This document shows positions 8,086 through 57,734 of a stretch of 64,000 bases of DNA, in pieces; positions within the stretch are counted from its first letter, which is position 1, and every line of letters starts with the position of its first letter. A model generated the notes under the pieces. It made no database searches and was not told where the DNA came from. It was given only the letters and a program-made list of their open reading frames with translations. A program made the position numbers and the translations under genes. The stretch lies in IMG/VR virus record IMGVR_UViG_3300046513_000348, positions 62,001-126,000 of that record. One strand, written 5' to 3'.

Positions 8086-8118
8086 TATACTCCAGGCCGC
8101 AAGGCCTGGAGTATATGC
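8086..8118. terminator. Bidirectional hairpin, family 1
   Basis: tatactccaggcc-gcaa-ggcctggagtata plus TATGC, between convergent genes. Confidence 0.8.
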
Positions 8119-11014: not shown

Positions 11015-12334
11015 TTATTCAGGCAATGGCATGCGGGAGATGTGACGAGAATGTACGTCGGCCAGGAAAGCGATCGGATTATCCGGGTTTTCCTTGAATG
11101 CGTTTTCCACCTCGCAGCCAGGCAGGCGGATTGTATTCTTCGACAGCAAAGACATGCAGCGAATATGATGCTCTTCGGAAATGTTGTCATACATCTGTTC
11201 GATGTATTCGAAGATTTCCACCGAGGTCAATTCGTCGATGAGGTATTCGTTGTCGATACGCGACTTGCGACGAACGGCGGGATCCAGATCTTCAGGATGA
11301 TTGGTAGTCATGATGATGATCAAGTTGTCCAGACCAACCACGCCGTCGAACGCATTCAGCAAGCCCGACATGGTAAGACCGCCGCCAGTCAAAGCTTCTG
11401 CCGCAATGGATGCCGCATCTTTCTCTTTGTCTTGCTTACGTTTACGAACTGCGCTGCCTGCCTGGTCCACATCTTCCAGCAAGAGGAACGAACCTGGGCG
11501 AATGTTTGCCAGAGCAGCCATCAGCGTTTCGTTGGTCATGGCGGACAGATCCATGACGTAGATGTCCCGGCGGAAATGCATTGCCAGCAAACGCGACAGC
11601 GTAGTCTTGCCAGTACCAGGCGGCCCGTAGAAAAGGAAAGAAGATTTGTAGGTCAAACCTTTGCGACGGTACCAGTCACGATTCTCGATGAAGTGCTGGA
11701 TCTTCCCAATGATGTCGTTCTTCTGCTCACGGTTCATGCAGAACGTCGAAATGTCCCGCGGAGCTACCTGGCAGATTTCCTTCCAGCCATCGCGACCACC
11801 CACACCGTGCACACTGATCGTGTCAGTCTTGGCCTTCTTCGAATTGAACAGGTTAGTCAGGCGTTCGAATACCGTGTTGTTCAAACCGAAGGTACGAATC
11901 GTGATCTCTTCCTTCTCACGTTCAGCGCCAGACGAATCGAGCTTGCGTTTCGTGAACCAGAACAGACGACGTTCGTAGAAGAAGAAGTGATAGCCGAAAC
12001 CAATGCCCAGGCGATAAGGCGAATAGTTCTCTTCAGCAAACAGATCTTCGCGCCATTGACGGAACATAAAGAAGTTGCGACTGAACCGTTTGTAGCCCGA
12101 CTGCATGAACCACTTGTCGAACAAAGTGTATGCATCGATGTTACCATCGTAACCTGCATTGTTCAGGCTCATCGTCACGGTCGTGAAGCGAATGAACGCA
12201 TCCCAGATACGAGATGGCAGATTCTTCAGATAGAACATCAAACCACCGATCAGTGGGATTGCGATCGTTGCGACCAGTGGGTTAGCTCTGGTGATTTCGT
12301 TGTAGTGGCTGATGATCGAAGTGATCCAGTCCAT
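11015..12334 (-). CDS. Bcs1-like membrane-anchored AAA+ ATPase
   Basis: N-terminal TM segment, BCS1_N-like GFGYHFFFY...EEITIRTFG, WYRRKGLTYK, Walker A GPPGTGKT, Walker B LLLEDVD, LTMSGLLNAFDGV, MTTNHPEDLDPA..R..RID. Confidence 0.88.
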   Translation of the reverse strand: MDWITSIISHYNEITRANPLVATIAIPLIGGLMFYLKNLPSRIWDAFIRFTTVTMSLNNAGYDGNIDAYTLFDKWFMQSGYKRFSRNFFMFRQWREDLFAEENYSPYRLGIGFGYHFFFYERRLFWFTKRKLDSSGAEREKEEITIRTFGLNNTVFERLTNLFNSKKAKTDTISVHGVGGRDGWKEICQVAPRDISTFCMNREQKNDIIGKIQHFIENRDWYRRKGLTYKSSFLFYGPPGTGKTTLSRLLAMHFRRDIYVMDLSAMTNETLMAALANIRPGSFLLLEDVDQAGSAVRKRKQDKEKDAASIAAEALTGGGLTMSGLLNAFDGVVGLDNLIIIMTTNHPEDLDPAVRRKSRIDNEYLIDELTSVEIFEYIEQMYDNISEEHHIRCMSLLSKNTIRLPGCEVENAFKENPDNPIAFLADVHSRHISRMPLPE

Positions 12335-12391
12335 TTGAAACTCCTAAAGGGTTGACTAGATTAGAAATCTGACAAACAGAAAAATACCTAA

Positions 12392-12415
12392 CCATCCTGC
12401 CGTGAGGCAGGATGG
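12392..12415 (-). terminator. Hairpin, family 2
   Basis: ccatcctgcc-gtga-ggcaggatgg. Confidence 0.7.
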
Positions 12416-12419
12416 AGGA

Positions 12420-13010
12420 TCAACGGAGTTTCGATAGATCAAGGTAAAACGACATTGCACGGTAGGGTTTCGGGAAGTACAACTTCGCCTTACCCAGATA
12501 GTGGCCAGGACTATCGTTGCCAATCAGACGGGAGAATACGGCGACCTCGATGATTGCCGAAGTGTCGTTCAGTTCAGCACGGCTGATCGTTCCCTTGAAA
12601 ACGTAGAGATGTAACCGCTCTGCGACTTTCGAAGCATTGAGGTTTCCAACATCTTCCTTAGCCAGGTTTTCGTAATTGATGCAGTCCAGTGCCATCGGCG
12701 CATGCCAGCCCGGAGTCGTCTTGGCGAAGTAAAACACGATCTCGCGATCTTCCGCCAGGGAAAAACTCATGCCAGGGACCCATCTTTTCGGCTCATGACC
12801 CACGATGTTCGTCAGACGTCCTAACGGGGGATTGTACAGGTCGTATTCGTTTACAGGCGCTACAAGCTCTTTTTGTTGTTCTGAGCTGCGCTGTTGTGTC
12901 CGAGGTGTCCGGAGCGCTGCCACGAGGCTCTGAGGACTTGCCAGGGGCATTCCTGCCTCCTCATCACGCTCCCCGCTCGCTGCGCGCTTGCGATCTACGA
13001 AAGTTTTCAT
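12420..13010 (-). CDS. Hypothetical protein
   Basis: 196 aa, GGAG Shine-Dalgarno. Confidence 0.7.
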   Translation of the reverse strand: MKTFVDRKRAASGERDEEAGMPLASPQSLVAALRTPRTQQRSSEQQKELVAPVNEYDLYNPPLGRLTNIVGHEPKRWVPGMSFSLAEDREIVFYFAKTTPGWHAPMALDCINYENLAKEDVGNLNASKVAERLHLYVFKGTISRAELNDTSAIIEVAVFSRLIGNDSPGHYLGKAKLYFPKPYRAMSFYLDLSKLR

Positions 13011-13022
13011 TTTTTTACTCCA

Positions 13023-13324
13023 TGACTTTTATTCAAAAGATCAAAAGTCAAATAGGATAAAACACCAAGACCACCTTTCGGCGGCCTTGGGTTTCGGGAT
13101 TGGGGATTATCAAGCATGTTGTATCCCTCTGTACGAGAGGGATACTAACTTCTTTTTTACACAAAGCGAGTAGCTTTGTCATTTCTTTGTTTTTGAAAAA
13201 AAGACTTCTTTCTTATTAATATAAATACGTTAGTATTTATATTCATTATAATACTAAGAATAATAAAGTCTCGCACTATATCAAAGTAGGCAATAATAAA
13301 TAACATAAACACCGTAGACGGTGT
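13023..13324. other. AT-rich divergent intergenic region with at least six inverted repeats
   Basis: Stems at 13023-50, 13060-94, 13121-45, 13161-79, 13202-71 (apical 13218-43) and 13309-24. Confidence 0.7.
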
Positions 13325-13406
13325 CGAGTTTCTTTCGCGGTAAAATTTTCGGAAAACGCAGATCTTCTGACCTTGAATCCACCATACTTTTCGAGAGGAC
13401 ATACAG

Positions 13407-14054
13407 ATGGGTTTGGTAGCCACCATGCGCGACGTGCAAACCAGCACGAAGCCCGAAGAACTGAATCGATACAATCCGGAACGGCCGATCATGGTCGATG
13501 GCAGTCTGAGCGAACTCGTGACTCACGCTCTGAACATCGCCTATTCCAAACGCAGCATGACTACGGGTGATCCGTTTTACGGCAATCCCAATCCGACTGG
13601 CAATCCTGCGCCAGGTGCTGGCTTCGTGCCGAACATTCAAGCACCGGATGCGAACCGTACCGAAAAGGTCGTTCGTCCGACGCTCGAAGGCATGCAGATG
13701 CACCAGGAAGAAGCCGAGCACGTTGCCGCTGCTCTGTCCACGGTGCTGAACGCCAAGGACAAAGATGCGACTTCGTATCTGGCCCAGGAACCACTGGTCG
13801 TGTACGCCCTGCCAGCCGACGGCATGGTGAGCGAAGAAATGAATGCCGACATCGACATGTATGCTGAAAGCGGCGCGGTCGACATCGGTGATTTCGTCTT
13901 CGTCTTCTCCGACAACAACGATCCGACGATCGCTCAAGACTATCGTCCGGTCGACCTGAACCAGCGCGTCAAGGATTACGAAGGCAAAGGAGCCCGGGTC
14001 TACAAAGACCTGCAGTCGTTCCTGATTGCGCTGCCAGATTTGCGTCGTAAGTAA
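13407..14054 (+). CDS. Conserved phiKZ-like protein, probable head protein
   Basis: 215 aa, DGSLSELVTHALNIAYSK motif, possible protease site TLE/G; GAGGA Shine-Dalgarno. Confidence 0.7.
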   Translation: MGLVATMRDVQTSTKPEELNRYNPERPIMVDGSLSELVTHALNIAYSKRSMTTGDPFYGNPNPTGNPAPGAGFVPNIQAPDANRTEKVVRPTLEGMQMHQEEAEHVAAALSTVLNAKDKDATSYLAQEPLVVYALPADGMVSEEMNADIDMYAESGAVDIGDFVFVFSDNNDPTIAQDYRPVDLNQRVKDYEGKGARVYKDLQSFLIALPDLRRK

Positions 14055-14060
14055 TCCGCC

Positions 14061-15308
14061 ATGCCTGGTCAGATTAAAGCTGTGATGGATCAGGAGTTCA
14101 GTCATCTTCCGATCGACAAGAAACTCTTGGATCGCATCCTGAAATACGAACGCGATTTCATTAACAAAAACGAAGACCACATCACCTTCTTCGGTGGCCA
14201 CCTGATGGGTGTGCAAGTGGTTCGCTTCGATCCGCGTGATCGTGCTTACTGGTTCGACGACGTTCTCGAGATCAACGAGTCCTCGCTCCAGGAAGTTCTG
14301 TACGCACTGAAAAGCGAAGAACACAAAAACGAACCACTGATCGACCCAGAGTTCAATGTCCGCAGTGACGTGATGAACATCACTTGTGGCTACCTGGTCC
14401 ATCGGTTCATGAACGCAACTCACCTCCCACTCGACAAACGGGAACAAGGTGCAGAAGCAGTCATCCGCATTATGCTCTACAAGTTCCTGACCTCGCTGCT
14501 CTGGAACTACTTCAAATACCCGGCCAATCCACAAGTGGCAGAAGCGACCTACAATGCTCTGTCGCTGAAGTTCGGCCTGAAGAAAAACGGCAATTGGAAG
14601 AAGTATCTGGACGAGCGTGCTCACCTGACATTGGCCAAGGGTTCGATTCACCACAAGACCCTGGTCGACATGCGTGATGATGAAGCTTTCCTGTACTTCA
14701 TCGGCGATACCCAAGGTCGTGTGCGCGGTACGGTGAAATCCATCTACGCAATCTTCGACCGCATGAACAAAGCAGGCGTTCGCATCATTTCTTCGTCTTC
14801 AGTGATGGAGTACGATGGCGAATTGATTCTGAAGGACAAGTCTCGAACTTACCAGGCCGAGATCCGTTACATTGCCGACATCATCGGTGACCGTGGTTCC
14901 TTCGTCAAACCTGAACTCCTGCGCATCATCGAGAAATCGGTTCCGACAGCCAATCCGACGATGCTGATCAAAACGCTGAACTGGATGTCCGACAATGCTG
15001 GTTACGGCAAAGACGATATCGTTAATCAACTGACGATGAAAACAGTCATCTATTCTTTCAACTACCTGACCCGCAATCCAGGTCTCGTTAAAGGTCGCCG
15101 TGACATCTCTGGTGTTCTGGTGAGTCTGCGTGGCTCCTTCACTGCTTCCCGTGCTTCGGATGAAGATCTGATGGAACTTCGCGAGATGGCTGAGAAAGTG
15201 GCAGGCTTCGCAACGGGATCCAAAAATGAAACGGTTCTGAAAGCAATTCGTACGGCAGTGCTGTTGTACATCATCGGCCGCATCATGTCGAAAGACTACT
15301 ACAGCTGA
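14061..15308 (+). CDS. Conserved phiKZ-like protein, probable virion structural protein
   Basis: 415 aa, KNEDHITFFGGHLMGV; located next to the terminase block. Confidence 0.7.
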   Translation: MPGQIKAVMDQEFSHLPIDKKLLDRILKYERDFINKNEDHITFFGGHLMGVQVVRFDPRDRAYWFDDVLEINESSLQEVLYALKSEEHKNEPLIDPEFNVRSDVMNITCGYLVHRFMNATHLPLDKREQGAEAVIRIMLYKFLTSLLWNYFKYPANPQVAEATYNALSLKFGLKKNGNWKKYLDERAHLTLAKGSIHHKTLVDMRDDEAFLYFIGDTQGRVRGTVKSIYAIFDRMNKAGVRIISSSSVMEYDGELILKDKSRTYQAEIRYIADIIGDRGSFVKPELLRIIEKSVPTANPTMLIKTLNWMSDNAGYGKDDIVNQLTMKTVIYSFNYLTRNPGLVKGRRDISGVLVSLRGSFTASRASDEDLMELREMAEKVAGFATGSKNETVLKAIRTAVLLYIIGRIMSKDYYS

Positions 15309-15310
15309 TC

Positions 15311-15745
15311 ATGATCCTCACGCGCTCGTCTGATCTGCCAAGTGGCGGACTTCATGATTTTAAGGGACAGTACCTGGCATTGCTGGAGGAGGCAAACTCC
15401 GAACAGTTCTTCTACGGTACTCCCTTGGACCCAAAAGCTTTCCGTCAGGTAATCTTGCATGGCGGAAACGTAGTAGGCGCATTCGAATACGGCACGACTG
15501 AGTTCGAAGGACGCAACTACTACCGGACCAATCGTCCGTACACCAGGAAAGAGTTTCGTGGTCAAGGCCACATGCGTGAAGCACTGGAATTCTGGTACGT
15601 CCACCGACGTCCTGCTCTGAGCTGGATCGATGATGAGAACGTCTCGTCGATTCGCCTCTTCCAGTCCCTGGGCTTCCGCATCGGACGTTCGTACTTCCAC
15701 AAAAACAAAGACGGTCACTTCTACATCTTGACACACGATGCGTGA
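15311..15745 (+). CDS. GNAT-family acetyltransferase
   Basis: Motif A EFRGQGHMREAL and motif B NVSSIRLFQSLGF. Confidence 0.85.
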   Translation: MILTRSSDLPSGGLHDFKGQYLALLEEANSEQFFYGTPLDPKAFRQVILHGGNVVGAFEYGTTEFEGRNYYRTNRPYTRKEFRGQGHMREALEFWYVHRRPALSWIDDENVSSIRLFQSLGFRIGRSYFHKNKDGHFYILTHDA

Positions 15746-16312: not shown

Positions 16313-16356
16313 GCATATACTCCTACTCCTGGCTTGCGCCAGGAGTAGGAGTATGC
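16313..16356. terminator. Bidirectional hairpin, family 1, TATG on both sides
   Basis: atactcctactcctggc-ttgc-gccaggagtaggagtat flanked by GCATA and TATGC. Confidence 0.85.
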
Positions 16357-16363
16357 TTTTGTT

Positions 16364-18547
16364 TTAGTAAACCGTACCGCCCGAATCGGTAACCCGACGA
16401 TAGACACCGGCAAAGATGTCCCTGTCGTTTGGCCGGTTGGCATTGATGCGTTTGTTTTCCCTGGACTTTTTGATGAGGTCCGAGACACTAAACGTTTCGC
16501 CTTCCTCTTCCACGATTTGGGAAGCCAGATTCTTCATCTCCGATTCGAGACGCATGATGACGAAGTGGTCTTTTGCATTTGCCAGCTGATCGGCGACTGC
16601 TTTCAGATCTTCGCGAAGTTGTTGTTGTTTGCGATCGAACGCGCTCATCTCCGTGTACGACTTCTTGACGAGCGTCGAACTCATGAGGTTAGTTGCATCC
16701 AAACCGTAGTACTGCAGATTACGACCGAACTTAGCCAGCCACATCGGAAGCAGCCAAGCCACCACGCCGTCGTCATGTCCACCTTTCGGGTGATCCACAC
16801 GACCGTTAATGACTTCCAGCGCCAGCAGCTGGTCGATGGTCTTGACGTCGTTGATTCGATCCATGGCATGGCGCACAGCTTCTTGCAGAACCTGGCCGTA
16901 GAGCAAGGAACGAGCATTGTCGCCGGTTGCACTCGTCTTGAAGCCGAATGCCGTTTTGTATTGGTTGTACAGATCGCCGTAGGTGTACTTGGTCGCTCCT
17001 CGGATTTCATCCATGACGTCCTTGTACTTCTCCATGTCCTGCACGATGCTGTTGTACAGTCGCTTGAAAGCGTTCTGACCATTCAGTCGGAACAGCAGGA
17101 GTAGCTGATCGATCAGGGATACACCAGTCGACTTACGTTCGATTACGGCGATGAGTTTAGGCCAGCGCTGCAGCTGATCAAAGAACCACTGGCCAAATTC
17201 GATCAGGTTGGACATCTGGACAAAGCAGGTGCCGATTGTTTCGAGAGTTGTCAGGTCGACATATTGCAATGCGATCTCGTCTTTACCACCGGCTTCGGAG
17301 GTATCGACACCGACTGCAATGTTGCCTTCTTCCATGAGGGCATCGCGGGTCTTCAGGCTGACGTACCATTTCGTCATGTAGCGCATCTTCGGGTCGATCT
17401 CCGCCACGAAGTCTTCACGCTGGTTTGCACGAATGGTGTCAAGTTGGTCTGCGGTAAGAGGGGATCCGCGGCCGCCAGAAGTCCAGACGTTGAAGTAATC
17501 TCGGTCGGCCTCTTCGCCGCTAATCATTGCCTTCTTGATGTTGTCGTAGTGCTGGGCATCGGAGATACCGAGCATGCGATGGCTGAACGTGCAGTTGATC
17601 GCAAAGCCGTTCGCACTGCCTGCCAACACCATCTTCTTCAGGTCATCGTGATCCTTGCAATCAAAGATCAGATCCGTGAATGGGAAGGAGTCGGTCAGAA
17701 TCTGGTAAGCATACTTACCGTCGCGATCGTCTTTCTTGCCCGCGGTAGTCGCCAGCACAATGCCATGGTGGGCATTGTTTTCTTTTGCACTAACGAATGC
17801 CGCGTTGGTTGTCGACAGAATGGTAGTCAGGGTTGCTTTGAGCCAGGAGATGTAAGCAAATTCGTCAATGCGGATGTTTGCAGACGTAAAGCCTCGACCA
17901 ACTTTATAAGCACCCTTCTCGTCGCCTCGTGGGACGTGGGTTTCATACTTGTTGTCAACTGCCGACAAGTAGATGTATTCTTGGTTGCTCGGATCTTTCT
18001 TCGGAGTGGACCTTCGCAGGTACATCGGAAGAACTTCCTCATACTCCTTGAGACGAGCAATGTCGTTTCGACGCAGCTGGTCTTCTTTTGTCAGGAGGTG
18101 GATACTGGAGTGAACCAGACCGAAGTTCAACAGGTATCGGTCAAGCGCCGAAATGTTCACTGACTTGCCAGTCTGACGTGGCTGAATCAGGAAGGTGGTA
18201 ACGTGATTGAAGTAGCACCACCAGAGTGCACAGTTACCGCGGTTCGCTTTCACAACACTCGGTTTCATCGAGCCCTGAACTGGGATCCTGGCAATCTCGC
18301 GGAAGAAGTACCATGGGTTCTCGAAGCACTCCTTGGTGATCAGAGCTTTCATTTCGAGAGACAGGTTGTTCTCATCGAAAGGATCAACTCCCACCAGGTC
18401 CTCGTTATGTAAGGCCAGAGGCCAGAGGTTGTTCTTTACCCCCATATCCTCAAGGATATAACAGATGTCGACAAAGGACTTGTTGGGGGTGTCTATGTCG
18501 ATAATGGCATGCGGATATCGCTTCCAGTCTTGCTCGAACAGAATCAT
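16364..18547 (-). CDS. terL: Terminase large subunit (phiKZ gp25-like)
   Basis: ENPWYFFREI, Walker A QPRQTGKS, Walker B IRIDEF, nuclease VGVDTSEA and HPKGGHDD. Confidence 0.93.
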   Translation of the reverse strand: MILFEQDWKRYPHAIIDIDTPNKSFVDICYILEDMGVKNNLWPLALHNEDLVGVDPFDENNLSLEMKALITKECFENPWYFFREIARIPVQGSMKPSVVKANRGNCALWWCYFNHVTTFLIQPRQTGKSVNISALDRYLLNFGLVHSSIHLLTKEDQLRRNDIARLKEYEEVLPMYLRRSTPKKDPSNQEYIYLSAVDNKYETHVPRGDEKGAYKVGRGFTSANIRIDEFAYISWLKATLTTILSTTNAAFVSAKENNAHHGIVLATTAGKKDDRDGKYAYQILTDSFPFTDLIFDCKDHDDLKKMVLAGSANGFAINCTFSHRMLGISDAQHYDNIKKAMISGEEADRDYFNVWTSGGRGSPLTADQLDTIRANQREDFVAEIDPKMRYMTKWYVSLKTRDALMEEGNIAVGVDTSEAGGKDEIALQYVDLTTLETIGTCFVQMSNLIEFGQWFFDQLQRWPKLIAVIERKSTGVSLIDQLLLLFRLNGQNAFKRLYNSIVQDMEKYKDVMDEIRGATKYTYGDLYNQYKTAFGFKTSATGDNARSLLYGQVLQEAVRHAMDRINDVKTIDQLLALEVINGRVDHPKGGHDDGVVAWLLPMWLAKFGRNLQYYGLDATNLMSSTLVKKSYTEMSAFDRKQQQLREDLKAVADQLANAKDHFVIMRLESEMKNLASQIVEEEGETFSVSDLIKKSRENKRINANRPNDRDIFAGVYRRVTDSGGTVY

Positions 18548-27897: not shown

Positions 27898-28020
27898 GTT
27901 GTTCTCCTTGAAAAGGTTTTGGCCAAAAAAGATTTTGATTGCGTTTCGTAAATCCGAGAGAGCATAACACCCATAATTGCTACTGGCCGAAGCCAGTAGC
28001 AATTACAGATGGGTTTCGTC

Positions 28021-44899: not shown

Positions 44900-44937
44900 A
44901 TACGAGAGTGGGGAAACCCACTCTCGTATTTATTATG
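44900..44937 (+). terminator. Hairpin (GAAA loop) plus TATG
   Basis: atacgagagtggg-gaaa-cccactctcgtat then TTATTATG. Confidence 0.8.
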
Positions 44938-46864: not shown

Positions 46865-46899
46865 GCATATACTCCTGGCCGCGAGGCCAGGAGTATATG
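46865..46899. terminator. Bidirectional hairpin, family 1, TATG on both sides
   Basis: catatactcctggcc-gcga-ggccaggagtatatg. Confidence 0.85.
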
Positions 46900-48205: not shown

Positions 48206-48237
48206 CTACTATCGTGACCCGAAGGTCACGATAGTAG
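48206..48237 (-). terminator. Hairpin (UUCG loop on minus)
   Basis: ctactatcgtgacc-cgaa-ggtcacgatagtag. Confidence 0.75.
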
Positions 48238-55647: not shown

Positions 55648-55693
55648 GCATACTACTCTACCAGTCCCCTAGGGGACTGGTAGAGGCTTATGC
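55648..55693. terminator. Perfect 30-bp palindrome, bidirectional, TATGC on both sides
   Basis: ctctaccagtcccct|aggggactggtagag with GCATA at 55648 and TATGC at 55689. Confidence 0.85.
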
Positions 55694-56153: not shown

Positions 56154-57734
56154 TTACTTGGCCTTTTTCTTACCCGCTTTGTTCAAGCGGAGATTGGAGT
56201 AGTAACCACAGTAAGCCCCGACGTCATCATTACTTTGGATAACGGTGAAGTAGCGGAAGACACCCGGCGATTCTTCCCACGACAGCATCGTGACTTTCGG
56301 CACCGATTCTTCAACACGCTTCAGGCCATTGCGATCGGGAAGATCGATGCCGAAGGTGAGAATCGTTGGGAGGACGTGCTCGACGCCATTCGAATCGCGG
56401 AAATTAGCGTCAACAGAGATCGAAGCTACCCCAGGCTTGATCGACGCTAAAAGCTTCGCTACGTGTACGTCCTGCTTCTTCTTCTGGATCACGGACGCTT
56501 CATATAAATGAGGCGTAAGATCGGTAATCGTGAAGCGTTTTGCTTCGTCTTTACCATCCAGGAAGTCGTTCATCCACATGGCAACGTTGTTCATTGCCAT
56601 GACCGCTTCAAGGGCCTTCTTGGGCGGTTCGATGACTTCGGTGACGATCTGTTTATCAGCCGATACCATGCTGTTGCTGTGGCTCACGGGCTGGTAGACC
56701 GAGAAGGTTCCGTATTCCGTGAACTGCTTGAAGACCATCGGCTTGAAGAAGGTGCTCAGGTGAGCGACCACCATCTCGTTTGCTTGTTCGCCGTTCTCGC
56801 AGTGGAACTCGATCAGCTTCTCGATGGACTCGATTGGCTGTGCAAGTTTCAGCACGGAGTACGACGTATCGGACAGGCGCTTGCCGAACAGGCCCAGGTC
56901 CTTGTCTACTGCACCCATGTAGTAGGTGCCGGGAACGTGATTCGAATGATCACCGTTGAAGAACAGCTTCTGATGGACCATGAGCGGATGCTTGTCCACT
57001 TCGCCCATCTTCCAATAGCCAGTTGCTTCCGAACGCTTGATGATGGGTTCTTTCATGCCAGCAACGGTCATGTTCTTGCCCAGGTTCGCGTTCATGTCGG
57101 CCATGACGTTACCCATGAAGATCGAATGACCCTTCAGCCACGAAGCGTGGATGTTAAAGTCTTTCATCTCGTTCTTCAGACGCCAGGCACGTTTCCACAG
57201 CTCGACGTTCTTGATGGTCTGGCCATCGCGACGGCACCAGTTGTTCTTTGCCCACAGCGGCAGCACTTTGTTCCAGCCATCGAGCGTGTATTCGCTATCC
57301 GCATAGATTTGGATTGTGCGAATGTTTTCACGCTGGCAGTATTCCAGCGCCATGATGAGAGCGCAGAGCTCGGCCACGTTGTTGGTGGTACGCAGGCCAG
57401 GTTCGTCGATTGGTGCAGGACCGAAGCCGTCCAGATAGAACAGCGGAGTTACTTCCTGGGCTTCCATGAAACGATCGAGAATGCTGATCGTCTCTTCGTT
57501 CATGTAACGCTCGTCCAGGCTTTCGTAAGGGTTCCCACCCTTACGATGAGCGTCCAGCATCGTCTTCTCGACGTAGCCTTCATTGGTTACGTAGTAGTCG
57601 GCGTTGCCGCTACCTTTCTTGGGCGCCTCCAGCGAATACGCATAGCCGTGGAATCCCCAACCACCGTCACCGGGATTAGGAACGCACGAACCATCCGTAT
57701 GCAGGATGATCGCATCGATTTTTTGTTCACTCAT
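56154..57734 (-). CDS. rnhA: Ribonuclease HI with a long C-terminal extension (phiKZ gp155-like)
   Basis: HTDGSC.PNPG.GGWG, TNNVAEL, DSEY, KNVELW, WLKGH, GNVMAD. Confidence 0.92.
   Translation of the reverse strand: MSEQKIDAIILHTDGSCVPNPGDGGWGFHGYAYSLEAPKKGSGNADYYVTNEGYVEKTMLDAHRKGGNPYESLDERYMNEETISILDRFMEAQEVTPLFYLDGFGPAPIDEPGLRTTNNVAELCALIMALEYCQRENIRTIQIYADSEYTLDGWNKVLPLWAKNNWCRRDGQTIKNVELWKRAWRLKNEMKDFNIHASWLKGHSIFMGNVMADMNANLGKNMTVAGMKEPIIKRSEATGYWKMGEVDKHPLMVHQKLFFNGDHSNHVPGTYYMGAVDKDLGLFGKRLSDTSYSVLKLAQPIESIEKLIEFHCENGEQANEMVVAHLSTFFKPMVFKQFTEYGTFSVYQPVSHSNSMVSADKQIVTEVIEPPKKALEAVMAMNNVAMWMNDFLDGKDEAKRFTITDLTPHLYEASVIQKKKQDVHVAKLLASIKPGVASISVDANFRDSNGVEHVLPTILTFGIDLPDRNGLKRVEESVPKVTMLSWEESPGVFRYFTVIQSNDDVGAYCGYYSNLRLNKAGKKKAK

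What the first reader, a model, noticed from the sequence alone, without database searches (positions are those of the whole stretch)
13023..13324. Hairpin-packed AT-rich divergent spacer: candidate replication origin or structured RNA
Seen: the longest intergenic stretch in the window (about 390 nt) and visibly the most AT-rich. It holds tgactttt/aaaagtca, a minus-strand G-U-containing stem ccaaggccgcc-GAAA-ggtggtcttgg, gtatccctct/agagggatac plus a U-tract on plus with no upstream plus gene, acaaagc/gctttgt, a nested AT palindrome 13202-13271 with apex aatataaatac-gtta-gtatttatatt, and acaccgt/acggtgt. Inference: a DNA-unwinding or cruciform origin, a packaging or nucleus-anchoring site, or small RNAs terminated from both sides.
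Basis: partly seen in the sequence, partly recalled or inferred. Interest (0 to 1): 0.6.

Follow-up and report, generated by a model that had tools for sequence, protein, structure and literature searches.

The report
Conserved palindromic non-coding hub, jumbo phage
The 396-base gap between two diverging genes of this soil jumbo phage is a conserved, single-copy non-coding module (the easiest-to-melt DNA of the genome, centred on a palindrome, next to a structured RNA ending in a terminator), which makes it a candidate for the still unknown replication origin of nucleus-forming phages.

Summary
The window belongs to a 218.7-kb phiKZ-like jumbo phage related to Ralstonia/Burkholderia Chiangmaivirus. 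All the inverted repeats exist. The gap 13011-13406 is the genome-wide minimum of duplex stability and the maximum of hairpin density, and the same holds at the syntenic site of phage RSL2.

Nine relatives keep the module. Hairpins A, B and C covary (93.5% of cells paired, 21 of 33 pairs changed on both sides). Hairpin A pairs only on the minus strand, through G-U pairs under mostly GNRA loops. It sits in a terminator / U-tract / GATCTTYTGA-box arrangement that occurs again behind a coding gene elsewhere in the genome. A non-coding minus-strand transcript of about 140 nt therefore most likely ends at A.

The core, 13222-13239, is conserved in sequence and is not a generic promoter. The same 18 bases lie in the AT-rich part of lambda-type origins, inside O genes.

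Function is not shown. My best guess (0.4) is a transcription-activated origin, which fits a phage with an RNase H gene and no detectable primase. Nearly as likely (0.33) is a small-RNA locus with its control site. GC skew gives no support, there are no iterons, and no RNA data exist.

The parts
13033..13042 (-). Left outer box, GATCTTTTGA on the minus strand, 22 nt before the start codon of the left gene; probable promoter element of that gene.
   Evidence: Inverted copy of the right box (repeat I13). The motif occurs only 3 times in the genome: the two here, each facing its flanking gene, and a third behind a terminator. Conserved in relatives.
13055..13090 (-). Hairpin A (13065-13090; 11 bp, two G-U pairs, GAAA loop) plus a U tract (13055-13064): terminator of a minus-strand non-coding transcript.
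   Evidence: Flagged by the terminator scan. The 11-bp core is 100% paired in 9 sequences, with 8 of 11 pairs changed on both sides. Pairing is 97.5% on the minus strand and 80.7% on the plus strand. Loops on the minus strand are GAAA, GCAA, GUAA, GUCA, and a 3-nt AAA in L240. The same hairpin + U tract + box arrangement follows a coding gene at genome 215250.
13102..13107 (-). Invariant GGGGAT (AUCCCC on the minus strand) in the unpaired linker between hairpins A and B.
   Evidence: Invariant in the eight-sequence alignment; kept in 8 of 10 sequences in the wider set.
13121..13145 (-). Hairpin B (10 bp). On the plus strand it is followed by a T run.
   Evidence: 8 of 9 pairs changed on both sides in 9 sequences. 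The strand cannot be decided from the window's own Watson-Crick pairs.
13161..13179 (-). Hairpin C (7 bp). On the plus strand it is followed by a T-rich tract.
   Evidence: The stem is replaced by a different sequence in the Chiangmaivirus clade. The same stem with another loop is in L239, and a GCGAAGC-type hairpin is in L243.
13190..13202 (.). T5-G-A7 box, a T-run/A-run motif kept in all ten relatives. It is a near match to the phage's generic promoter-like motif YTTTTAMAAT and a candidate start region for the leftward RNA.
   Evidence: Alignment. The generic motif lies 12-45 nt before start codons in this genome and in RSL2. The match to that motif is by eye only.
13202..13271 (.). AT-rich imperfect palindrome. 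The apex is 13218-13243 (11-bp arms, loop GTTA). The conserved 18-mer is 13222-13239. An inverted pair TTAGTATT/AATACTAA lies at 13230-13237 and 13250-13257. This is the duplex-stability minimum of the genome.
   Evidence: The 18-mer is invariant in 8 sequences and exact in 8 of 10. It is single-copy in this genome. AATACTAA occurs 3 times in the genome, 2 of them here. The syntenic site in RSL2 is the stability minimum there too.
13262..13280 (+). Conserved A-rich/CTC box (AAAATTCTC..AC in relatives) right of the core; possible start region for rightward transcription.
   Evidence: Conserved columns. The function is inferred only.
13309..13324 (.). Hairpin D (6-7 bp) in front of the right box.
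   Evidence: It covaries (3 of 5 pairs changed on both sides). Different stems occupy the same place in L239 and L243. The strand is not decided.
13361..13370 (+). Right outer box, GATCTTCTGA, 36 nt before the start codon of the right operon (a 215-aa protein, then a PHIKZ032-like head protein).
   Evidence: Nearly invariant in 10 sequences. The box and what follows it resemble the third copy at genome 215250.

Best explanation
The gap is one conserved, single-copy non-coding module. Each flanking gene has its own outward-facing GATCTTYTGA box. The roughly 320 nt between the two boxes is a separate unit. At its centre is an AT-rich palindrome, the easiest DNA in the genome to melt, and its sequence rather than merely its pairing is conserved. 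To the left lies a structured RNA of about 135-150 nt, read on the minus strand (hairpins C, B, A), that ends at hairpin A and its U tract just before the left gene's box. To the right a shorter stretch ends at hairpin D. I think the module is most likely the phage's replication origin, of the transcription-activated kind. Short transcripts diverging from the core would underwind and open the palindromic unwinding element. An RNA 3' end or RNA-DNA hybrid, trimmed by the phage's RNase H-containing polymerase accessory protein, would then prime DNA synthesis in a phage that has no recognisable primase. SHOWN: the anatomy; the single copy; conservation in ten phages; covariation and strand specificity of hairpin A; the stability minimum in two genomes; the recurrence of the terminator-plus-box arrangement; an RNase H gene and no detectable primase domain. 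INFERRED: that the RNA is made; where it starts; that the core opens or binds a protein; and any role in replication.
For: Conserved synteny and sequence blocks. Covariation: 96.5% of cells paired with 0 of 500 shuffles as good, against 33-51% for slid controls; 93.5% paired and 21 of 33 pairs changed on both sides in 9 sequences. The covariance model finds exactly one copy per genome and also detects relatives it was not trained on: L243 at 68.6 bits, L239 at 40.6 and L240 at 22. Hairpin A is minus-strand specific and the minus-strand fold has z = -6.8. A 14-bp GNRA terminator, U tract and the same box follow a coding gene at genome 215250. The site is the genome-wide minimum of duplex stability and the maximum of hairpin density in this phage and in RSL2. 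The core is not a generic promoter. The exact 18-mer lies beside the iterons inside lambda O-type replication genes: 87 viral contigs, against 4 for a composition-matched control palindrome. In an unbiased sample those O genes carry either the exact 18-mer or nothing within 6 mismatches. It also sits next to direct repeats in unrelated contigs, for example L021 at 63% G+C. The genome has an RNase H domain in a 549-aa frame and no DnaG zinc-ribbon or Prim-Pol match. The literature states that chimalliviruses lack a primase, carry an RNase H-clamp on the polymerase, and may start replication at RNA-DNA hybrids (PMC13648698).
Against: There is no direct evidence of replication function. Cumulative GC skew shows no turn at genome 75.2 kb. 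There are no iterons, and no initiator gene is adjacent: the left protein models as a beta-sandwich, not a DNA binder. If the structured RNA starts at the core it runs away from the unwinding element, unlike ColE1, T7 or T4 oriF primers. No promoter for it was identified with confidence. No RNA-seq run holds this phage. The 18-mer also turns up by chance in coding genes of bacteria (Gemella, aspartyl-tRNA synthetase). Its loop is GTA in the closest relatives and the core has diverged in L240, so the cross-phage identity may be coincidence. L242 has lost hairpins B and C. phiKZ has no equivalent gap.
Confidence: 0.4

Rival explanations
1. A small-RNA locus with its control site and no role in replication. 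The core palindrome is a promoter/operator region from which a structured RNA of about 140 nt (and perhaps a short rightward one) is made. The RNA acts in trans on phage or host messages or proteins. The AT-richness simply reflects promoter DNA.
For: The same covariation, strand specificity and terminator-module evidence as above. An invariant unpaired AUCCCC lies between hairpins, as seed regions do in small RNAs. The T5-N-A5 box resembles the generic promoter-like motif. The only other very AT-rich locus of the genome (genome 53990-54080) looks like a pair of back-to-back promoter motifs.
Against: It does not explain why the core is a unique, sequence-invariant palindrome unlike any of the phage's recurrent promoter motifs. 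It does not explain why this is the stability minimum in two genomes, nor the identical 18-mer in lambda-type origins. There is no Rfam family and no transcript data.
Confidence: 0.33
2. The hairpins are long structured 5' leaders (riboregulators or attenuators) of the two flanking operons, both transcribed from the core.
For: Hairpin A followed by U residues could act as an attenuator in front of the left gene. Conserved leader structures are common. Both flanking units would then share one control region.
Against: Each flanking gene has its own conserved box 22-36 nt before its start codon. The same box follows a true end-of-gene terminator elsewhere. In the Chiangmaivirus clade a generic YTTTTAMAAT motif lies between hairpin A and the left gene. 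The right-hand leader is not unusually structured.
Confidence: 0.12
3. A packaging initiation (pac) site or another DNA-handling site used by the terminase, whose large-subunit gene lies 3 kb away (16364-18547, minus strand).
For: It is close to the large terminase gene. It is a unique, conserved, AT-rich site with repeated half-sites. The termini of these phages are unconfirmed (PMC11898562).
Against: A strand-specific RNA-type structure is not expected at a pac site. Nothing in the contigs marks molecule ends here: the contig breaks at the palindrome in runs X2-X3 are what an assembler does at inverted repeats. No small terminase gene is adjacent.
Confidence: 0.06
4. Nothing special: an AT-rich spacer with chance hairpins.
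For: Divergent spacers are often AT-rich.
Against: Conservation with compensatory changes across phages whose flanking proteins share only 33-59% identity. Genome-wide extremes in two genomes.
Confidence: 0.03

Closest known systems
Lambda-type origin (ori inside gene O: iterons, AT-rich unwinding region, palindrome)
   Same: An AT-rich unwinding segment built around a short palindrome. The very same 18 bases (window 13222-13239) form that segment in a set of enterobacterial lambdoid prophages, directly beside their iterons and inside a Phage_rep_O gene followed by a lambda P gene.
   Different: Here there are no iterons, no O or P genes, and the site is intergenic. The flanks are hairpins and short transcription units instead.
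Transcription-primed or transcription-activated origins (ColE1 RNA II/RNA I, T7 primary origin, T4 oriF/oriG)
   Same: A structured RNA of about 100-150 nt with three stem-loops next to an easily melted region; dependence on RNase H-type processing is plausible; no dedicated primase is needed for the first primer (knowledge of those systems; PMC13648698).
   Different: No promoter was mapped. If the RNA starts at the core it points away from the AT-rich region. No antisense partner is shown and no RNA-DNA hybrid is shown.
Herpes simplex virus oriS/oriL (AT-centred palindrome between divergent transcription units)
   Same: An AT-rich palindrome sitting between two diverging genes, in a virus that replicates inside a compartment (textbook knowledge).
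   Different: No flanking initiator-binding boxes or initiator gene were recognised here. The resemblance is one of layout only.
Phage and bacterial small RNAs ending in an intrinsic terminator
   Same: Several hairpins, an unpaired conserved linker, and a last G+C-rich hairpin followed by U residues.
   Different: No Rfam family matches. No target is known. In the Chiangmaivirus clade the U tract is only 2-3 residues.
SPbeta-like phages: non-coding region upstream of the yonO RNA polymerase gene
   Same: The identical 18-mer palindrome, extended by compensating flanks to 12 bp, lies in a large divergent non-coding region.
   Different: There it follows a perfect sigma-70-type promoter, and the pyrimidine tract is on the other side of the GTTA loop. 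SPbeta itself lacks the exact motif.

Membership tests
Intrinsic (hairpin plus U tract) terminator | G+C-rich stem-loop directly followed by a U run on the transcribed strand | tested here: met
   Hairpin A on the minus strand: 11 pairs, 7 of them G-C, tail UGUUUUAU. L239 and L243 also have U-rich tails. The Chiangmaivirus clade has only UCUU(U/A)C.
Intrinsic (hairpin plus U tract) terminator | Transcripts actually end there | not testable with these tools
   No RNA run holds the phage. Indirect support only: the same hairpin / U tract / box arrangement follows a stop codon at genome 215250.
Conserved structured RNA | Base pairs kept through compensatory changes, beyond controls | tested here: met
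   0 of 500 shuffles reach the observed values. Slid controls pair 33-51% against 93.5-96.5% observed. Caveats: only 7-9 sequences in about 3 clades, and alignment A9 is fitted to the model.
Conserved structured RNA | Membership of a described RNA family | tested here: not met
   No Rfam 15 match at gathering score in the whole window. Only chance-level hits at E of at least 0.49 in 12900-13500.
Iteron-type origin (lambda, P1, plasmid theta origins) | Three or more direct repeats (iterons) beside the AT-rich region | tested here: not met
   Only two-copy, low-identity direct repeats. There are half-sites AATAC(T/G)(A/T)A, 2-3 copies, partly inverted.
Iteron-type origin (lambda, P1, plasmid theta origins) | Initiator gene at or next to the origin | tested here: not met
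   The flanking proteins have no replication-family hits. The left protein models as a beta-sandwich with no DNA-binding fold found.
Any replication origin | DNA unwinding element: local minimum of duplex stability | tested here: met
   Global minimum at 50, 100 and 150 bp in this genome and at the syntenic site of RSL2.
Any replication origin | Strand-compositional switch or replication initiation mapped at the site | tested here: inconclusive
   No turn of cumulative GC skew at genome 75.2 kb. The skew is weak everywhere and probably set by transcription. No coverage time-course is available.
Transcription-primed origin (ColE1/T7/T4 oriF type) | Promoter whose transcript enters or hybridises at the unwinding element | tested here: inconclusive
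   No confident promoter. The T5-N-A5 box is a near match to the generic motif in either direction.
Transcription-primed origin (ColE1/T7/T4 oriF type) | RNase H present and no dedicated primase | tested here: met
   PF00075 hit at 75 bits in a 549-aa frame; PF01807 and PF09250 absent. This agrees with PMC13648698. Absence of a Pfam hit does not prove there is no primase.
phiKZ-type early promoter region | Recurrent AT-rich consensus found upstream of early operons | tested here: not met
   The recurrent motif ATATATTAC (7 copies, all on the minus strand, in this genome and in RSL2) and GATATATT are absent from the gap.
pac site | Preferred DNA ends or terminase binding at the site | not testable with these tools
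   Only assembled contigs were available. Published genomes have unconfirmed termini.

The most novel reading that the evidence does not exclude
This module is the replication origin of a clade of nucleus-forming-type jumbo phages. It would be a primase-independent origin in which short divergent non-coding transcripts open a palindromic unwinding element, and an RNA end or RNA-DNA hybrid processed by the RNase H-clamp primes synthesis. In this reading the 18-bp palindrome is a portable unwinding module also used by lambda-type and SPbeta-like phages.
Probability: 0.3. Interest if true: 0.85.

Novelty: new variant of a known kind. Interest (0 to 1): 0.62.

Why it matters
How nucleus-forming jumbo phages start DNA replication is an open question. 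They have no recognisable primase or clamp. A 2026 preprint (PMC13648698) proposes that RNA-DNA hybrids may serve as start sites, but no origin has been mapped.

This locus gives that question a concrete, testable address in culturable phages (RSL2, RSF1, FLC6/FLC8, SURPRISE13, RsoM3USA). It is single-copy and conserved, it is the most easily melted DNA of the genome, and a conserved structured RNA lies beside it.

Even if it is not an origin, it is an undescribed conserved non-coding RNA locus in a phage group where almost no small RNAs are known. The module also documents a promoter-like box and a terminator style of these phages.

The same 18-bp palindrome inside lambda-type origins is a separate lead on what makes an unwinding element work.

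Tried and rejected
- **Rfam:** no family at gathering score in the window, and only chance-level hits at relaxed E-values. There are no tRNA or tmRNA genes.
- **Generic promoter idea for the core:** rejected. TAAATAC is not enriched, and AATACTAA occurs 3 times in the genome. The recurrent motifs ATATATTAC, GATATATT and CTTTTACAAT are not in the gap.
- **GC skew:** no signal at the site.
- **Polypyrimidine asymmetry:** not exceptional in this genome. Only the T-rich and A-rich extremes either side of the palindrome stand out.
- **Left gene as an SRA/PUA-like DNA binder:** this was an ESM Atlas feature lead (score 0.92). It is not supported. The AlphaFold model (pLDDT 70) is a beta-sandwich behind a disordered basic N-terminus. 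The best PDB match has Z = 5.5, to a phage baseplate protein, and Foldseek gave nothing at E <= 0.001. The right gene gave no lead.
- **Conserved small ORFs in the gap:** none. Open frames differ in place and length among the ten sequences.
- **phiKZ synteny:** the head-protein homologue PHIKZ032 has only a 90-nt divergent gap, and the covariance model finds nothing convincing in phiKZ.
- **More relatives through the right-hand protein:** almost none in viral or metagenome contigs. Relatives came instead from homologues of the left protein.
- **RNA evidence:** no RNA run holds the phage. The laid DNA runs are assemblies only.
- **Literature:** no paper holds the 18-mer, and nothing on this region appears in the Chiangmaivirus papers.
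- **A 30-nt BLAST of the core against named phages:** only AT-rich noise apart from the Chiangmaiviruses.
- **Significance of the 18-mer across phages:** only partly settled. The matched control palindrome gives 4 hits against 87. However, singleton hits in AT-rich contigs and coding hits in bacteria are at chance level.

Only genetic code 11 was used.

Full report
**What the window is.** The window is bases 62001-126000 of a 218,660-bp viral contig from a rhizosphere metagenome. Its genes match the phiKZ-like Ralstonia/Burkholderia jumbo phages of the genus Chiangmaivirus (RSL2, RSF1, FLC6, FLC8, SURPRISE13, RsoM3USA). Nucleotide identity reaches about 78% in the best-conserved gene, and protein identity is about 55-59% in the gene next to the finding. 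The finding lies in the 396-nt gap between two genes:
- 12420-13010 on the minus strand, a 196-aa protein with no family hit;
- 13407-14054 on the plus strand, 215 aa, phrog_29071.

A homologue of the phiKZ head protein PHIKZ032 follows on the right. The large terminase gene is 3 kb further on.

**Check of the observation.** The region is far from what chance gives.
- Six terminator-like sites were found, against 1.4 in shuffles.
- It is one of only two places in the genome with at least 80% A+T over 60 nt, and the richer of the two.
- It is the least stable duplex of the whole genome at 50, 100 and 150 bp. At 50 bp it lies 5.6 sd below the mean.
- It has the highest density of perfect hairpins of any 396-nt window.
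- The highest T fraction and the highest A fraction of the genome lie side by side here, on either side of the palindrome centre.
- At the syntenic site of RSL2 the same two extremes hold: minimum stability at all three scales and maximum hairpin density.

**Conservation.** All annotated Chiangmaiviruses have the same divergent gap of about 480-500 nt. Homologues of the left-hand protein, at 33-54% identity, led to four more syntenic loci from soil and other metagenomes: L239, L240, L242 and L243. The ten-sequence alignment shows two kinds of conservation.

The first kind is blocks kept in sequence:
- the 18-mer TAAATACGTTAGTATTTA at 13222-13239. It is exact in eight of the ten; the loop is one base shorter in L239, and L240 has diverged;
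- a T-run/A-run box at 13190-13202;
- an A-rich/CTC box right of the core;
- GGGGAT at 13102-13107;
- two outer boxes, described below.

The second kind is hairpins kept in structure while their sequence changes.

**The hairpins are real, and hairpin A belongs to the minus strand.**
- On seven sequences, the three left hairpins are 96.5% paired on the minus strand, with ten pairs changed on both sides. None of 500 shuffles reaches this, and slid controls pair only 33-51%.
- The mirror structure on the plus strand is 86.5% paired. Hairpin A alone falls to 80.7%, because its G-U pairs become A-C mismatches.
- The loops of A on the minus strand are GAAA, GCAA, GUAA and GUCA, with a 3-nt AAA loop in L240.
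- The window's own fold has z = -6.8 on the minus strand and -3.5 on the plus strand.
- A covariance model built from these seven sequences finds exactly one copy per genome in this phage, RSL2 and SURPRISE13, and nothing convincing in phiKZ. It also detects the element in three relatives it was not trained on: L243 at 68.6 bits, L239 at 40.6 and L240 at 22.
- On the nine sequences, 93.5% of cells pair and 21 of 33 pairs have changes on both sides. The 11-bp core of hairpin A is paired in every sequence. That alignment is fitted to the model, so it leans towards the structure.
- Hairpin D on the right also covaries, but the right half as a whole is not unusually structured (z = -0.5).
- L242 has lost hairpins B and C.
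- No open reading frame is conserved across the gap.

**The outer boxes and the terminator module.** The motif GATC(A/T)T(C/T)TGA occurs three times in the genome. Two copies bracket this gap as an inverted pair, 13033-13042 on the minus strand and 13361-13370 on the plus strand. This is repeat I13. Each faces its flanking gene, 22 and 36 nt before the start codon, and both are conserved in the relatives.

The third copy, at genome 215250, follows the stop codon of a protein gene. It comes after a 14-bp perfect hairpin with a GTGA loop and a U tract, and it precedes the next gene. That is the same order as hairpin A, U tract, box and left gene here.

I therefore read hairpin A as a terminator and the box as the promoter element of the next gene. 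Since nothing coding lies upstream of A on the minus strand, the transcript that ends there is non-coding. If it starts near the T-run/A-run box it would be about 135-150 nt long. That box is a near match, by eye, to the phage's generic YTTTTAMAAT motif, which lies 12-45 nt before many start codons in this genome and in RSL2. The start of the RNA is inferred, not shown.

**What the core is not.**
- It is not one of the phage's recurrent promoter motifs. ATATATTAC occurs seven times, all on the minus strand, in this genome and also in RSL2. GATATATT and CTTTTACAAT likewise occur elsewhere, and none is in the gap.
- AATACTAA, which forms an inverted pair in the core, occurs only three times in the genome.
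- The gap has no iterons.
- The flanking proteins show no replication or DNA-binding family.
- An Atlas hint that the left protein is SRA-like was not borne out by a model of moderate confidence, which looks like a beta-sandwich.

**A lead from other phages.** The exact 18-mer occurs in 87 viral contigs, against 4 for a palindrome of the same composition and shape.
- Most hits are prophages of about 46 kb. In bacterial genomes the same context is found in Citrobacter, Enterobacter, Morganella and related genera. In these the 18-mer lies inside a lambda O-type replication gene that is followed by a lambda P gene. It sits directly beside runs of iterons of at least three different kinds, which is the place of the AT-rich unwinding part of ori-lambda.
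- In a sample drawn through the P protein, and so not biased by the motif, O genes carry either the exact 18-mer or nothing within six mismatches. That points to constraint.
- A second group is SPbeta-like phages, where the 18-mer follows a perfect sigma-70-type promoter upstream of the yonO polymerase gene. SPbeta itself lacks it.
- Several unrelated contigs have direct repeats next to it, including L021 at 63% G+C.
- In each lineage the flanks extend the palindrome with different, compensating bases.

Against reading too much into this: exact copies also sit in bacterial coding genes by chance. Singleton hits in AT-rich contigs are at the level of the control. The loop is GTA in the closest relatives of this phage. 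And the pyrimidine tract lies on opposite sides of the loop in jumbo and SPbeta-like phages. I treat the match as moderate support for an unwinding-element role, not as proof.

**Context from the literature and the genome.** Chimalliviruses are reported to lack a primase and a clamp. They carry an RNase H-clamp protein on the polymerase, and the authors of that report suggest that RNA-DNA hybrids may start replication (PMC13648698). No origin is described in the papers I could search. This genome has an RNase H domain in a 549-aa frame (window about 57084-57713, minus strand) and no DnaG zinc-ribbon or Prim-Pol match.

**Weighing.** Three things are solid:
- the module is single-copy and conserved;
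- it has a sequence-conserved palindromic core at the genome's stability minimum;
- it has a strand-specific structured element ending in a terminator.

What it does is inferred. One model explains all the features together: the origin reading, in which divergent short transcription opens the core and an RNA end or hybrid primes synthesis. It has no direct support, shows no skew signal, and faces an awkward RNA direction, so I give it 0.4. A small-RNA locus with its own control site explains the RNA features equally well, but not the uniqueness of the core or its twin in lambda-type origins; I give it 0.33. Long leaders of the flanking genes (0.12), a pac site (0.06) and chance (0.03) follow.

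**Limits.**
- No RNA data exist for this phage.
- The DNA runs are assemblies only. They show that relatives at about 90% identity live in other soils, and that assemblers break at the palindrome.
- The comparative set is ten sequences in about three clades.
Only genetic code 11 was used.
- The large protein search was used once, for the left protein, because Pfam and PHROGs had left it open.

Noticed in passing
window 16317-16354, 8086-8115, 46866-46899, 44900-44929, 27974-28005, 48206-48237, 55656-55685 (and about 40 more in the genome): The phage's usual end-of-operon signals are very long perfect palindromic hairpins (13-17-bp arms, 4-nt loops such as GCGA, CACG, GAAA). Many have conserved outer flanks of the type CATATACTCC ... 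GGAGTATATG. GGAGTATATG occurs 9 times against 0.07 expected.
   Followed up: partly
window 6547 and 50160 (minus strand); genome 30395, 46971, 58440, 190158, 201839: ATATATTAC occurs 7 times, always on the minus strand, usually behind an AT-rich stretch. RSL2 has the same count and the same strand bias. It is probably the early (virion RNA polymerase) promoter consensus of this clade, close to what I recall for phiKZ.
   Followed up: partly
window 6496, 10235, 10901, 28570 and about 20 other places in the genome: The promoter-like motif YTTTTAMAAT(G) lies 12-45 nt before start codons, mostly of minus-strand genes. It is conserved as a class in RSL2, where CTTTTAAAATG is the commoner form.
   Followed up: partly
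loci L066 3722-3739, L007, L083, L021, L011 3044-3061 and others: The 18-mer TAAATACGTTAGTATTTA is shared with the AT-rich part of lambda-type origins inside O genes of enterobacterial prophages. It is also shared with SPbeta-like phages upstream of yonO, and with contigs where it abuts direct repeats. A matched control palindrome gives 4 hits against 87.
   Followed up: partly
genome 53949-54135 (8 kb before the window start): This is the only other stretch with at least 80% A+T over 60 nt and the second-least stable duplex. It carries GATATATT-type motifs on both strands and a CTTTTACAAT motif, so it looks like a promoter cluster rather than a second copy of the module.
   Followed up: partly
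genome 215175-215310, minus strand (outside the window): Third copy of the GATCTTTTGA box. It comes right after a 14-bp GNRA-looped terminator and U tract that follow a stop codon. The bases after the box resemble those after the right-hand box of the finding.
   Followed up: yes
window 12420-13010 (minus strand), protein P0001: The left-hand protein has a strongly conserved, disordered, basic N-terminus (the motif DRKRAASGER is kept down to 33% overall identity) in front of a beta-sandwich domain with no clear structural relative.
   Followed up: partly
locus L011 3324-5210, 5376-6077, 6257-6928: In an SPbeta-like metagenomic phage the yonO-type RNA polymerase gene appears split. Its N-terminal and C-terminal parts (both phrog_8308) lie on either side of an HNH endonuclease gene.
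   Followed up: no
window 57084-57713 (minus strand; genome 119084-119713): An RNase H domain lies in a 549-aa open frame. It is probably this phage's counterpart of the RNase H-clamp protein recently described for chimalliviruses (PMC13648698).
   Followed up: no
window 11234-15320, runs X2-X4: Relatives at roughly 88-94% identity occur in other rhizosphere and soil metagenomes (two further studies). Their contigs break at the palindrome. Their core reads with a GTA loop, and they have a longer pure pyrimidine tract to its left.
   Followed up: partly
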